Both the position numbers and the translations under genes were made by a program. 64,000 nucleotides of DNA, from assembly GCF_963853765.1 (NCBI RefSeq), contig NC_088856.1, forward strand, positions 34,658,001-34,722,000, read 5' to 3'. The notes beneath the pieces were generated by a model. The model was not told the origin of the DNA, searched no databases, and worked only from the letters and a program-made list of their open reading frames with translations. The first letter of the stretch is position 1; each line of letters starts with the position of its first letter. Source of the stretch: Magallana gigas (taxonomy: Eukaryota). Positions 40,101 to 43,100 of this stretch are shown one piece after another.

Positions 40101-43100
40101 GAAGAAGATCGACGAATGATATCAATTATCTAAACACCATCTACTGTCATTTATTTCATAATCAATCATCACACTGAAGTAAATCCATTAATGTTACCAT
40201 TATCTATTTTAAATCTCTTTGTTTAAAAAAAAAATGAAAAAAAAAAAATATCATACATAATTATCTACAGCCTTTAACTTTTGACAATTTTTTCCATCTC
40301 ATTACATTCATTCCGTTTTACATTCTACCTATCAGCTTTCAGACTTTACCTGTCCCAGGTAAGAATCCGTCGGGTGACAGCCCGTTGGGCCAGTGCCCCT
40401 GGGTTGGGGGGTTTGGGGTGGTCAGTCCGTTGAATGGCGACTTGGGGTCTCCTCCCTCAAGCCCCGATTGGGCGGCCACTTCCTTCCACAGCTGCTGAAT
40501 TTCTGTTGGGGACATCATTCCTGGGGGATACAAAAATGGTCTGGTTAGGAAAAACATGACTGTCATTTCTTGGTGGTTCCCCCACCACTCACAGTACCGC
40601 TCCCACTGTTTCTCTGACCCCAAACTACTAGCTGTTAGTGCTCTGAACTCAGGCAGTGTTGTGTCAGGCAGAAAATTTAATCAATGTTCTTGTTTTCCTA
40701 GTATGATAAACAAAGCCTGTGTTGTCTTTAGCCCACAACAATAACAGCCAAACATTGGCAGCACCAACAGTGTAAACAATACATTTCAGTATTGATCTTT
40801 GAGCTTCACGTTTGCCACAAAATTTTGCACACTGACTAATCAAATCCCTTACAAAAATAATAACATTTCACATGATATGGCCATTTCCATTTCAAGACCT
40901 AGAACGTGCACTGTTTGCATGGTCACACTGAGAGACTGTTTCAACAGACGAAAAACTGCTGCCTTTGCCAATTTTTATTTCTGACTGCCTGAAAAATAAA
41001 CAATGAATATCTGGCTTGTCTGTTCGGCCTACATCAAGGTCACAAACAACACAATTTACCCTGTAAACAAATTAACTTGAATCCCGAATTGATGTTTGTA
41101 CAACAATAACTCTACTATACAGGTCTTCTCAAAAGTCATCTACCATTATTTATGAACAACCATCAGCTAAAAGAACTACTGCAGAAGTTAACAAAATTAT
41201 CTCTACCTAAAATGCAAAGCCCACGGGTCTAGGGGGTGCAACACAGAATTTATTGAATAAAAGAATAAAAAAATGTGGAGCATATCAAAAAGATATGTAA
41301 TTTTAACATGATAATGGCAGCTAGATTGGGACTGACAAACAATATCTAAAAGAACTGCTGAACAGAGCAGCGGATTTCAGGTTAATTGATAACACGAAGT
41401 GGGTCGTTAATTTCCGCTGCTGCTATTTTTGTTTACACTCTGCACAGCCGAGATCAATGAACTACAGTGTACTTGTTTGTTTTATTTTCTAGGCAGATTT
41501 TTTTTTAAGCTGAATTGTTTATCAGGCATCTGCTTAGGGGTTTTAAAGCTCTGAATTATTGAACTGCCTCTGTAGCAGCTCAAAGGGGTTGATAAGATAA
41601 AAAGGCAGATATGAAATAACATTGAAAGAAGGGGGGGGGAGATGAAAAAATACCTAAAAAATGAAGTATCTAAGAGCAATAAATTCAATCAAATCGGTCA
41701 TGATTCTCAAGTAAATCTCCTGGGACTTAATTGACACTCAATTTGAAAGACATAACGCACGTAACATTATTTACAAAAGCCAAGTTTCCAAAAGTAAATA
41801 GTTTGTATCTTCTGTTCAACACTGTGCCTACATGGATCCCAGAGGCCGGCATTAGAGCCCCTGGCACAGATGCAGCGTTTCCTGCGCCAGGGCCCTAGTC
41901 TGCAGCAGGTGAGAATCCCAGCTATCAAGATAAGGCCTGGCAGCAAACACAAACACGGTAAACAAAAGCATTAGTTCCAGGCAAACCTGAGTAAACAAAC
42001 ATGGGGACCACCCTTGCCCCAGTGTAAACAATGCACGGTATAAATAGCAACATTTTTTATCAGTCTCCACCAGAAAAATAAGCAAATCAAAACAGCTAAC
42101 TCCACTCTCCTCACGTTTCTCAGGTACATAGATCGATTCCACGATCTCAAGTTTCAGACCAGAAATTCTTTCAAACTCGGGAATAGGTTTTTTTCTTTTT
42201 AAACTTTCAATTTATGTACGTGCACTCAAGCAAATAAAAAATAATAATATTAACTATTGCCCGTAATCAAAATAAAGTGTACAAAATTATATGAAATTTT
42301 TTTCCTAAGAGTTTAAACAAACTTAAATGTTTAAGATTGAATTATTTTTTTGACCCTAATACATAAATCAACAACTCTTTTTGTTTCCATTTGCTTTGTC
42401 AATTTCTTTATCGCATCCGGCCTGAACACCATCTGCTGAGCATGAGGTACAGGCACATGTAAATCTCTAACTTTAATAATTAATCAATCAATCAACACAT
42501 TATTTCCCCATATACAGATAAAAAATATTGATACAACTACCTAACATATTAATTCCCCCCCTTACATTTAAGATTTCACACAGATTTCATCTGGTAGTGC
42601 TAGCGAACAATGTTGCACAAAGACTAATCTCCATTTATATAAAAGGCCATAAAAGATCTTTTCCCCCTTAATCTTTAAATTCTAAATACAAAATGAGGGA
42701 AGAAATACGTGCAGGTACATTGAAAAAAAATAAAATTGATTATGCCTCTGATATCTATCTTGAGAGACCTGGCTAAGCTTAGTTAGGGCAGCCCATCTTA
42801 CCATTGCGCAGGTACATCTGGAGTTCAGTGGGTCATGTGACAGGTGGGACTTGTTGGTGTTTACCTGTTTGTTTACCTGCATGGCCACAGACAGGGGGCC
42901 CCCAAAAACTCAGGTGTCGGGCTGGAGTAATTAGTTGACACCTTGTGTCCTTTATGTTTATCGAGTGGTCTAAACATCACATTTACTGGCATGTGTCCGG
43001 CCATTCACTCCCTGACACCTAACTGTCTTCCTACTGACACACATTTTATTTTTTGGGCTCTTGTCGCCCCCCTCTGATGAATGTATATTGCTGACCATGT

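What the first reader, a model, noticed from the sequence alone, without database searches (positions are those of the whole stretch)
41943..42065. Three perfect forkhead sites spaced exactly 33 bp apart inside FoxP: candidate phased autoregulatory element
GTAAACA occurs at 41,958, 41,991 and 42,024 on the same strand. The spacers are unrelated in sequence, so this is not a tandem repeat. 33 bp is about three helical turns, placing the sites on roughly one face of the DNA. FoxP proteins bind this consensus and dimerise or multimerise through the zipper and domain swapping (established). Looser matches flank the trio: GCAAACA at 41,943 and ATAAATA at 42,040. A TATAAATA (42,039) and Inr-like TCAGTC (42,060) follow on the + strand, so an antisense promoter is possible, though TATA-Inr spacing (~23 nt) is short. 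Other Fox proteins could equally bind.
Basis: partly seen in the sequence, partly recalled or inferred. Interest (0 to 1): 0.72.

Follow-up and report, generated by a model that had tools for sequence, protein, structure and literature searches.

The report
Ancient forkhead-site array in FoxP intron
The three evenly spaced forkhead sites are real and sit inside a roughly 190-base non-coding element of an oyster FoxP intron that seven bivalve species have kept, with the sites, their order and their three-helical-turn spacing nearly unchanged, so it is almost certainly a working regulatory switch for FoxP, though which forkhead protein binds it is untested.

Summary
Observation confirmed. GTAAACA (in fact GTAAACAA) lies at 41958, 41991 and 42024 on the + strand. 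Spacers are unrelated, there is no tandem repeat, and the stretch is single copy.

The host is an oyster FoxP gene on the minus strand. Spliced reads define the intron as 40520-46149.

The trio lies in a conserved non-coding element, about 41904-42098:
- It is 85-88% identical in two Saccostrea species, above the neighbouring coding exon (80-82%).
- A profile of it hits once, on the same strand and in the same intron, in Pecten, Mytilus and Sinanodonta; blastn finds it in Pinctada.
- Across the seven bivalves the three TTGTTTAC sites are the best-conserved islands (20/24 columns invariant against 23/182 elsewhere).
- Site-to-site spacing stays at 31-33 bp (36 at the degenerate Pinctada site). 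An A/T-rich TATTTATA box sits 16 bp from site 3 in all seven.
- Oyster haplotypes carry almost no changes inside the block (1 of 64 codons, a start-codon artefact, against 15 of 57 beside it).

Stranded polyA RNA-seq shows only sense pre-mRNA, so the antisense-promoter idea gets no support.

Best reading: a forkhead-dependent intronic enhancer or silencer of FoxP. FoxP autoregulation is plausible but unproven. "Exactly 33" is not conserved; about three helical turns is.

The parts
41904..42098 (-). Conserved non-coding element (CNE), oyster-level core block; the deep bivalve core is about 41949-42090
   Evidence: By blastn it is 85% (S. echinata) and 88% (S. cucullata) identical, the highest of all intronic blocks and above the adjacent coding exon. 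Alignments A2-A4 cover it. A profile hits it in Pecten, Mytilus and Sinanodonta and blastn in Pinctada.
41958..41965 (+). Forkhead site 1, GTAAACAA (TTGTTTAC on the gene's sense strand)
   Evidence: Kept in 6 of 7 bivalves; Pinctada has TTGTTTGT.
41991..41998 (+). Forkhead site 2, GTAAACAA, extended to GTAAACAAACA
   Evidence: The 8-mer is invariant in 7 of 7 bivalves and is the most conserved 8-column window of the alignment.
42024..42031 (+). Forkhead site 3, GTAAACAA
   Evidence: The core GTTTAC is invariant in 7 of 7 and the full TGTTTAC in 6 of 7; Sinanodonta has AGTTTAC.
42039..42046 (.). A/T-rich box TATAAATA (TATTTATA on the sense strand), TATA-like or MEF2-like
   Evidence: Present in 6 of 7 species: exact TATTTATA in five, TATTTTTA in Mytilus, and CATTTATA in Sinanodonta. 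It lies exactly 16 bp from site 3 in all 7.
42008..42013 (.). CCACCC (GGGTGG on the sense strand), a CACCC-box-like motif between sites 2 and 3
   Evidence: Kept in 6 of 7 species at 16-17 bp from site 3.
42078..42084 (+). Fourth Fox-like site, ATAAGCA in oysters; ATAAACA in Pecten and Sinanodonta
   Evidence: A conserved island, TTGTTTATTTC in Pecten and Sinanodonta, 53-54 bp from site 3 in the species measured.
41949..41955 (+). Weaker Fox-like site ACAAACA just beyond site 1
   Evidence: Kept in Saccostrea. Pecten has a full TGTTTAC and Sinanodonta a TGTTTAT 13 bp beyond site 1.
41906..41934 (.). Oyster-only conserved flank: CAGGTG E-box-like motif and an inverted TATC..GATAAG pair
   Evidence: Invariant half-sites with a variable 2-nt centre in Crassostrea and Saccostrea, not alignable in the more distant bivalves.
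40520..46149 (-). FoxP intron that holds the element
   Evidence: Spliced reads join 40519 to 46150, with ends CT..AC, which is GT..AG on the minus strand, in three RNA runs.
40348..40519 (-). Downstream FoxP exon (encodes ..[14 protein letters not shown]..)
   Evidence: tblastn with Saccostrea FoxP; splice joint and loose ends.
46150..46388 (-). Upstream FoxP exon (Gln-rich)
   Evidence: tblastn; splice joint.

Best explanation
The trio is the core of an ancient cis-regulatory module, an enhancer or a silencer, in an intron of the single oyster FoxP gene.

The module is an array of same-orientation forkhead motifs (TTGTTTAC on the sense strand). The three main sites are held about three helical turns apart (31-33 bp). 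A fourth, weaker Fox-like site lies 53-54 bp upstream of site 3. An A/T-rich box sits exactly 16 bp from site 3, and a GGGTGG motif lies between sites 3 and 2.

Inferred mechanism: forkhead proteins occupy the three sites on roughly one face of the DNA, together with partners on the interleaved motifs, and this complex tunes FoxP transcription.

The most likely occupant is FoxP itself, bound as a zipper-linked oligomer. That would make the element an autoregulatory switch. I put that sub-claim at about 0.4. Any other forkhead protein that reads the canonical motif, FoxO or FoxA for instance, could bind instead or as well.

Shown here: the sites, the non-coding status, the conservation of sites, order and spacing, and the low polymorphism. 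Inferred: protein binding, which protein binds, and the direction of the effect on transcription.
For: 1. Sites and spacing are confirmed.
2. The block is non-coding:
   - 1-bp indels separate the species.
   - No splice joints touch it.
   - There is no Rfam match and no conserved RNA fold (-2.4 kcal/mol, 0 compensatory pairs).
3. The block 41904-42092 is 85-88% identical to two Saccostrea species, against 80-82% for the adjacent coding exon.
4. It is the only syntenic non-exonic match at E below 0.001 between the oyster and the Pinctada FoxP genes (E 2e-6).
5. A 4-species profile hits exactly once per locus, on the sense strand, in the orthologous intron of Pecten (E 1e-11), Mytilus (2e-7) and Sinanodonta (4e-4). 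In 126 kb of control DNA it finds nothing better than E 0.9 apart from itself.
6. In the 7-species alignment 20 of 24 site columns are invariant against 23 of 182 others (Fisher p 2e-12). The five best 8-column islands are the three TTGTTTAC sites, TATTTATA and the fourth Fox-like site.
7. Spacings (site 3 to 2, then 2 to 1) are 33/33, 32/33, 32/33, 32/36, 32/33, 33/31 and 31/31. The distance from TATTTATA to site 3 is 16 in 7/7.
8. In 29 in-frame oyster haplotype variants of an accidental ORF over the block, 1 of 64 codons inside varies (a start-codon artefact) against 15 of 57 outside (p 5e-5).
9. Literature:
   - TGTTTAC is the FOXP2 optimum, and FOXP2 ChIP peaks lie at FOXP2 and FOXP1 (PMC3695516).
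   - FOXP2, FOXP1 and FOXP4 activate FOXP2 regulatory elements in reporter assays (PMC5826363).
   - FOXP1 and FOXP3 prefer two direct GTAAACA copies on one helical face and need the zipper (PMC2779587).
10. The oyster has one FoxP locus with the zinc finger/zipper region and the FAYF hinge.
Against: - No binding, chromatin or reporter data were available, so function rests on conservation.
- The canonical motif is read by most forkhead families, and the genome has about 30 forkhead-domain loci. FoxP occupancy is therefore not shown.
- Within oysters the spacers are as conserved as the sites, so the Fox sites are not the only constrained part.
- Published FOXP spacing tests covered 10, 14 and 20 bp, not about 32 bp.
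- Spacing varies by 1-2 bp between species, and one oyster haplotype has a 1-bp deletion between site 3 and the A/T box.
- The element keeps one orientation relative to the gene in all species. An RNA-level role would predict that too.
Confidence: 0.7

Rival explanations
1. The element is Fox-dependent but not autoregulatory. Another forkhead protein occupies the sites, for instance FoxO, whose classic binding element is the same 8-mer TTGTTTAC, or a FoxA/FoxC/FoxK-type factor. The fixed spacing then comes from the interleaved partner sites and not from FoxP oligomer geometry.
For: All three sites carry the full 8-mer TTGTTTAC, which is also the DAF-16/FOXO element (my own knowledge). The genome has about 30 forkhead-domain loci. 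Interleaved conserved motifs, GGGTGG and TATTTATA, sit at fixed distances. Oyster spacers are conserved as well.
Against: Monomeric Fox proteins give no obvious reason for three same-strand sites to be kept 31-33 bp apart while the spacers diverge in distant bivalves. FOXP proteins are the forkhead subfamily shown to prefer multiple direct sites on one helical face through a zipper (PMC2779587).
Confidence: 0.35
2. The block is a core plus proximal promoter. Read on the + strand it has Fox sites at about -45, -78 and -111, a CACCC box at about -60, TATAAATA at -30, and a start near 42062-42069. It would drive an RNA antisense to FoxP, or, in the other direction, an internal FoxP transcript for a protein starting at MMSP.
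For: TATAAATA is a perfect TATA consensus, kept in 6 of 7 species at a fixed position. TCAGT is kept in oysters, and a CA lies 30 nt downstream of the TATA start. In the random-primed single-cell run the strand ratio flips across 41130-43529 (about 41 against 22 reads), hinting at non-polyadenylated antisense RNA.
Against: Two stranded polyA libraries give 0 antisense reads over 41930-42529 against 2-11x sense depth. Sense depth shows no step at the block, and no pile of starts is reported. The antisense-looking reads of the single-cell run already begin at 41130, upstream of the TATA on the + strand. The Inr-like TCAGT is not kept outside oysters, and Mytilus has TATTTTTA. The annotated shorter isoforms of relatives (about 160-180 residues shorter than the longest) fit a start upstream of exon 2 rather than in this intron (inferred from lengths).
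Confidence: 0.1
3. The element acts in the FoxP pre-mRNA. The U/G-rich sense-strand motifs (UUGUUUAC x3, UGUUUGUUUAC, GUGUUUGUGUUUG) would bind an RNA-binding protein that controls splicing of the 5.6-kb intron or use of the downstream exon.
For: The element keeps the same orientation relative to the gene in all seven species and lies 0.8-3.2 kb upstream of the same exon. The intron is well represented in polyA RNA on the sense strand. The GU-rich strings resemble CELF-type elements (my own knowledge).
Against: The conserved words are the canonical DNA forkhead motif. Spacing near multiples of a DNA helical turn, and a co-conserved GGGTGG and A/T box, fit double-stranded DNA recognition. The element is far from either splice site, there is no alternative splice joint in the reads, and there is no conserved RNA structure.
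Confidence: 0.08
4. Chance cluster, or the remains of a decayed 33-bp minisatellite, with no function.
For: An equally spaced triple of some 7-mer occurs in 23% of simulated windows. The genome holds many 30-34-bp minisatellites whose unit contains GTAAACA. The local density of Fox-like words is about three times the window mean.
Against: The GTAAACA-specific expectation is 5e-5 per window. There is no repeat signal. Sites, order and spacing are kept in seven bivalves of five families, and polymorphism is reduced.
Confidence: 0.02

Closest known systems
Tandem GTAAACA elements preferred by FOXP1 and FOXP3 (Koh et al. 2009, PMC2779587)
   Same: Direct repeats of the same 7-mer on one strand, spacing near whole helical turns, and a FoxP protein in the genome with both zipper and forkhead domain.
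   Different: The published elements have two sites 10-20 bp apart in synthetic oligonucleotides. Here there are three sites (plus weaker ones) about 32 bp apart in a natural, conserved element. Binding was not tested here.
FOXP autoregulation in vertebrates: FOXP2 promoter and enhancers activated by FOXP2/1/4 (PMC5826363), FOXP2 ChIP peaks at FOXP2 and FOXP1 (PMC3695516), and the Foxp3 autoregulatory circuit (PMC7008726, PMC6092677)
   Same: A FoxP-family gene carrying forkhead motifs in its own regulatory DNA. The location is intronic, like the Foxp3 intronic enhancers.
   Different: No sequence homology to the vertebrate elements was tested or claimed. The bivalve element is defined by conservation only, while the vertebrate ones are defined by binding and reporter data.
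Deeply conserved non-coding elements near developmental transcription-factor genes (vertebrate CNEs/UCEs; for example the ultraconserved autoregulatory PAX6 enhancer cited in PMC5826363)
   Same: Single copy, non-coding, more conserved than neighbouring coding sequence, inside a developmental transcription-factor gene, and holding sites for the gene's own family.
   Different: The lineage is bivalve molluscs, where I found no description of such elements. The element is only about 150-190 bp long, and at depth it is conserved mainly as motif islands with fixed spacing instead of a continuous block.
FOXP3/FOXP1/2/4 ladder-like multimers on TnG microsatellites (PMC10719092)
   Same: Multi-site recognition by FOXP proteins. 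Site 2 (TGTTTGTTTAC) and the stretch after site 1 contain two T3G-like units.
   Different: That mode needs long TnG runs (over about 29 nt). Here the units are isolated canonical motifs about 32 bp apart, so this is not that kind of element.
DAF-16/FOXO binding element TTGTTTAC (my own knowledge)
   Same: Identical 8-mer at all three sites.
   Different: FOXO binds as a monomer, and no fixed multi-site spacing is known for it.

Membership tests
Conserved non-coding element / cis-regulatory module | Not protein-coding and not a known RNA gene | tested here: met
   1-bp indels between species, no splice joints, no Rfam match, no conserved fold.
Conserved non-coding element / cis-regulatory module | Conserved above the surrounding non-coding DNA at the orthologous position in other species | tested here: met
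   85-88% identical in Saccostrea, above the adjacent exon. Unique hits in the same intron of Pinctada, Pecten, Mytilus and Sinanodonta, with a clean control search.
Conserved non-coding element / cis-regulatory module | Single copy, not a transposable element or repeat | tested here: met
   One match in the 564-Mb genome; no tandem repeat.
Conserved non-coding element / cis-regulatory module | Open chromatin and enhancer or silencer activity | not testable with these tools
   No ATAC, ChIP or reporter data could be reached.
Homotypic cluster of forkhead sites | Three or more matches to TGTTTAC / RYAAAYA within about 200 bp | tested here: met
   Three exact 8-mers plus ACAAACA, GCAAACA and ATAAATA.
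Homotypic cluster of forkhead sites | The sites are the conserved part | tested here: met
   20/24 site columns invariant against 23/182 elsewhere, p 2e-12.
Homotypic cluster of forkhead sites | A forkhead protein binds | not testable with these tools
   Needs EMSA or ChIP.
FOXP tandem-site element (PMC2779587) | Direct-repeat GTAAACA copies on one strand | tested here: met
   All on the + strand in the window and all on the gene's sense strand in the other species.
FOXP tandem-site element (PMC2779587) | Spacing that puts the sites on one helical face | tested here: inconclusive
   31-33 bp is 2.95-3.14 turns at 10.5 bp per turn, and it is kept in 7 species. The paper tested only 10, 14 and 20 bp.
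FOXP tandem-site element (PMC2779587) | A FoxP protein with zipper and forkhead domain is present | tested here: met
   One FOXP-CC locus. The exons encode the zinc finger, the start of the zipper and [23 protein letters not shown].
FOXP tandem-site element (PMC2779587) | Zipper-dependent cooperative binding | not testable with these tools
   Needs recombinant protein.
Autoregulatory enhancer | Lies in or near the gene and carries the motif of the gene's own product | tested here: met
   Intron 40520-46149 of FoxP. TGTTTAC is the FOXP2 optimum (PMC3695516).
Autoregulatory enhancer | Bound by the gene's own product, and expression depends on it | not testable with these tools
   Needs ChIP, knock-down and site mutation.
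TATA/Inr core promoter (antisense or internal) | TATA box consensus | tested here: met
   TATAAATA at 42039, kept in 6/7 species.
TATA/Inr core promoter (antisense or internal) | Initiator 28-33 nt downstream, conserved | tested here: inconclusive
   TCAGTC lies only 23 nt downstream and a plain CA lies at 30 nt. Neither is kept outside oysters.
TATA/Inr core promoter (antisense or internal) | Transcripts start there | tested here: not met
   0 antisense reads, no depth step and no start pile in two stranded polyA runs. The hint in the single-cell run is weak and does not fit the position.
Tandem repeat / minisatellite | Repeat units related in sequence | tested here: not met
   TRF finds nothing. 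Spacers are about 20-24% identical. Contrast the true 33-bp minisatellites found.
FOXP TnG-microsatellite element (PMC10719092) | Long uninterrupted TnG repeat (over about 29 nt) | tested here: not met
   At most two T3G-like units in a row.

The most novel reading that the evidence does not exclude
The element is an autoregulatory FoxP switch that predates the split of pteriomorph and unionid bivalves. On this reading its fixed three-turn spacing of same-strand sites reports the geometry of an obligate FoxP oligomer on DNA. Phased multi-site recognition through the zipper would then be an ancestral property of bilaterian FoxP and not a vertebrate FOXP3/FOXP1 peculiarity, and bivalves would offer a natural, evolution-tested template for that geometry.
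Probability: 0.3. Interest if true: 0.8.

Novelty: new member of a known kind. Interest (0 to 1): 0.62.

Why it matters
Three things follow if this holds.

1. It would be a concrete, small (about 150-190 bp) and deeply conserved regulatory element in molluscs, a group where almost no cis-regulatory DNA has been characterised.

2. It is a natural experiment on regulatory grammar. Spacer sequences have drifted, yet site identity, orientation, order and spacing (31-33 bp, and an exact 16 bp to the A/T box) have been held. The species span Ostreidae, Pteriidae, Pectinidae, Mytilidae and Unionidae. By my own knowledge of bivalve time trees, not computed here, that split is of the order of 450-500 million years old.

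3. It makes an old question testable outside vertebrates: whether FoxP proteins regulate their own gene, and whether they read DNA as phased oligomers. A handful of EMSA, reporter and CRISPR experiments in oyster would answer it.

Tried and rejected
Readings rejected:
- Tandem repeat or decayed minisatellite: no TRF signal, unrelated spacers, deep conservation.
- Transposable element: single copy.
- Coding or alternative exon: 1-bp indels between species and no splice joints. The 96-aa ORF over the block is accidental.
- Known RNA family or structured RNA: no Rfam hit at E up to 1, and no consensus fold or covariation.
- Antisense TATA promoter: no support in stranded polyA reads.
- Recurrent genome-wide 'grammar': the 30-34 bp triple pattern gives 153 matches, almost all minisatellites. 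Two other non-tandem triples (chromosome 2 and chromosome 5) showed no telling gene context; one lies about 0.8 kb from a TSSC4-like ORF.

Dead ends:
- The look-up of encoding contigs had no record for Saccostrea isoform X2, Ostrea edulis X2 or the Pomacea protein.
- The Littorina record covers only the 3' half of the gene, so no gastropod could be tested.
- Two metagenome scans with CNE patterns found nothing.
- A Logan contig of a relative that is 86% identical stops short of the element.
- Literature searches found no prior description of this element or of bivalve FoxP regulation.
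Full report
**1. The observation**

GTAAACA occurs at 41958, 41991 and 42024 on the + strand, exactly 33 bp apart. All three are the 8-mer GTAAACAA.

In register the 25-nt spacers share only 5-6 positions. Tandem Repeats Finder reports nothing there. The repeat finder only picks up the short shared context around sites 2 and 3. The 400 bp around the trio are single copy in the 564-Mb genome.

**2. Is it more than chance?**

The shape alone is not rare. 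In 300 order-3 Markov copies of the window, 23% held an equally spaced triple of some 7-mer with spacing 8-100. The real window has four such loci.

For GTAAACA specifically the expectation is about 5e-5 per window, and no simulation produced one.

Genome-wide, the exact 33/33 pattern has 26 matches against 0-1 for the reversed control. Of these, 24 are genuine 33-bp minisatellites, leaving this locus and one A-rich stretch as the only non-tandem cases. Relaxing the spacing to 30-34 bp gives 153 matches, again almost all minisatellites.

Statistics on one genome therefore say 'unusual'. The decisive evidence is comparative.

**3. Context**

The runs that hold the stretch are labelled oyster.

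The genome has a single FOXP coiled-coil locus, and it lies in this window on the minus strand.

tblastn with the Saccostrea echinata FoxP places 15 coding segments from 53325 down to 28174. Spliced RNA reads join 40519 to 46150 with GT..AG ends on the minus strand. The trio therefore lies in a 5,630-nt intron (40520-46149), between the Gln-rich exon and the exon encoding ..[14 protein letters not shown]... On the gene's sense strand the sites read TTGTTTAC.

The protein has the zinc finger, the start of the zipper and the FoxP-type FAYF hinge.

**4. Relatives**

Two routes gave orthologous DNA.

- An accidental 96-aa ORF over the trio served as a protein probe. It recovered Logan contigs of the same or very close oysters. 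One of them, 97.7% identical over 3.7 kb, keeps all three sites.
- FoxP proteins of other bivalves led to annotated genomic loci: Saccostrea echinata and S. cucullata, Pinctada imbricata, Mytilus coruscus, Pecten maximus and Sinanodonta woodiana.

**5. Conservation**

*Saccostrea.* In an intron-against-intron blastn the block 41904-42092 is the best-conserved piece, at 85% and 88% identity. The adjacent coding exon scores 80-82%. All three sites are intact. Site 1 to site 2 is 33 bp and site 2 to site 3 is 32 bp. Spacer 1 is almost invariant, and 1-bp indels rule out coding.

*Pinctada.* This block is the only syntenic non-exonic match at E below 0.001 across the whole gene (E 2e-6).

*Pecten, Mytilus, Sinanodonta.* A profile built from four species was searched against the three remaining loci. 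It gives exactly one hit each, on the sense strand, in the orthologous intron 0.8-3.2 kb upstream of the same exon. E-values are 1e-11 for Pecten, 2e-7 for Mytilus and 4e-4 for Sinanodonta. The same profile finds nothing better than E 0.9 in 126 kb of control DNA apart from itself.

*Seven-species alignment.* The best-conserved 8-column windows are the three TTGTTTAC sites, TATTTATA and a fourth Fox-like island. 20 of 24 site columns are invariant against 23 of 182 elsewhere (p 2e-12).

| Species | Site 3 to 2 (bp) | Site 2 to 1 (bp) | Note |
|---|---|---|---|
| Crassostrea (window) | 33 | 33 | |
| S. echinata | 32 | 33 | |
| S. cucullata | 32 | 33 | |
| Pinctada | 32 | 36 | site 1 is TTGTTTGT |
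| Pecten | 32 | 33 | |
| Mytilus | 33 | 31 | |
| Sinanodonta | 31 | 31 | site 3 is AGTTTAC |

The A/T box lies exactly 16 bp from site 3 in all seven species. GGGTGG lies 16-17 bp from site 3 in six, and the fourth Fox-like site 53-54 bp from it in the species measured.

The correction is that the conserved quantity is about three helical turns, not exactly 33 bp.

**6. Population data**

Twenty-nine in-frame distinct haplotype translations of the accidental ORF, from many oyster runs, were compared (32 were recovered; three frameshifted ones were set aside). One of 64 codons inside the block varies, and that one is a start-codon artefact. Outside the block, 15 of 57 vary (p 5e-5). A few of the outside differences are also artefacts of ORF starts or of an indel in the window's haplotype, which leaves at least ten real ones.

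Changes silent in that frame are invisible to this test. One such change is a common G/A polymorphism at 41957, directly beside site 1.

Two rare frameshift haplotypes exist inside the block. One is a 1-bp deletion between site 3 and the A/T box.

**7. Transcription**

Two stranded polyA libraries cover the whole intron at 1-18x, exclusively in the orientation of FoxP pre-mRNA. Antisense reads over 41930-42529 number 0. There is no step in depth at the block and no pile of read starts. This gives no support to an antisense or an internal promoter in those samples.

In the random-primed single-cell library the strand ratio flips across 41130-43529: about 41 against 22 reads there, compared with 6 against 77 in the flanks. 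This could be low-level non-polyadenylated antisense or enhancer-type RNA. It already begins upstream of the TATA-like box on the + strand, the numbers are small, and the mate bookkeeping of that library is unclear. I leave it unexplained.

**8. What it is**

The block is non-coding and is not a known or structured RNA. It is single copy and sits at the same place in the same intron in five bivalve families. At depth it is conserved mainly as transcription-factor-sized islands with fixed order and spacing. That is the signature of a cis-regulatory module.

Its dominant words are the canonical forkhead motif, so a forkhead protein is the expected reader.

Three lines of published work make FoxP itself a good candidate:
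- TGTTTAC is the FOXP2 optimum, and FOXP2 ChIP peaks lie at FOXP2 and FOXP1 (PMC3695516).
- FOXP2, FOXP1 and FOXP4 activate FOXP2 regulatory elements in reporter assays (PMC5826363).
- FOXP1 and FOXP3, unlike FOXA, prefer two direct GTAAACA copies on one helical face and need the leucine zipper (PMC2779587).

This remains inference. The same 8-mer is the FOXO element, and the genome has about 30 forkhead-domain loci.

**9. Known or new**

The kind is known: a conserved intronic enhancer, a homotypic site cluster, and possible autoregulation as at Foxp3 and FOXP2. This particular element is not described in anything I could find. I file it as a new member of a known kind.

It is not a TnG-microsatellite element of the FOXP3 ladder type, because long TnG runs are absent (PMC10719092).

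**10. Limits**

- No gastropod or other non-bivalve intron could be obtained, so the element's age beyond autobranch bivalves is unknown.
- Crassostrea-group proteins did not appear in the searches.
- No chromatin or binding data were reachable.
- The divergence time quoted elsewhere in this report is from my own knowledge, not computed here.

Noticed in passing
window 41130-43529: In the random-primed single-cell RNA run the strand ratio of reads flips (about 41 antisense-type against 22 sense-type reads; the flanks give 6 against 77). The stranded polyA runs show none. This may be non-polyadenylated antisense or enhancer-type RNA around the element.
   Followed up: partly
window 41347-41562, 42795-42998 and 45466-45741: Further intronic blocks are conserved between Crassostrea and Saccostrea (86%, about 72% and 75-79% identity). 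No match to Pinctada was found. They may be oyster-specific regulatory pieces.
   Followed up: no
window 41957: A common G/A polymorphism directly 5' of forkhead site 1. It is seen in 5 of 8 reads of one run, in an RNA contig and in a Logan contig. Saccostrea has T there.
   Followed up: partly
window 43246-43450: A 205-bp deletion allele inside the intron, seen in 5 reads of run X21 only.
   Followed up: no
window 45380-45413: A large pile of single-cell reads with 'goes back' joints and poly-A between the sides (hundreds of reads). It looks like a priming or concatemer artefact at a short low-complexity patch, not a transcript.
   Followed up: no
G000:C2:38058422-38058492 and G000:C5:17308002-17308072 (L021, L022): Two other non-tandem GTAAACA triples with 30-34 bp spacing. 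The first lies inside an ORF with no Pfam match. The second lies about 0.8 kb from a TSSC4-like ORF. Conservation was not checked.
   Followed up: partly
G000:C9:46576757-46577378, C5:6714769-6714874, C5:10120858-10153043, C1:68783334-69418841 and others: Several minisatellite families with 30-34-bp units each carry one GTAAACA per unit, so arrays of evenly spaced forkhead-like words are common in this genome as plain repeats.
   Followed up: no
window 52813-53325 (minus strand): The long ORF here (215 aa) is the first coding exon of FoxP, 78% identical to the Saccostrea N-terminus.
   Followed up: partly
L018 (Littorina saxatilis, GCA_037325665.1): The gene range on record for the 1144-aa FoxP covers only residues from about 503 onward. 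The 5' exons must lie elsewhere on the contig, so the record's range is incomplete.
   Followed up: no
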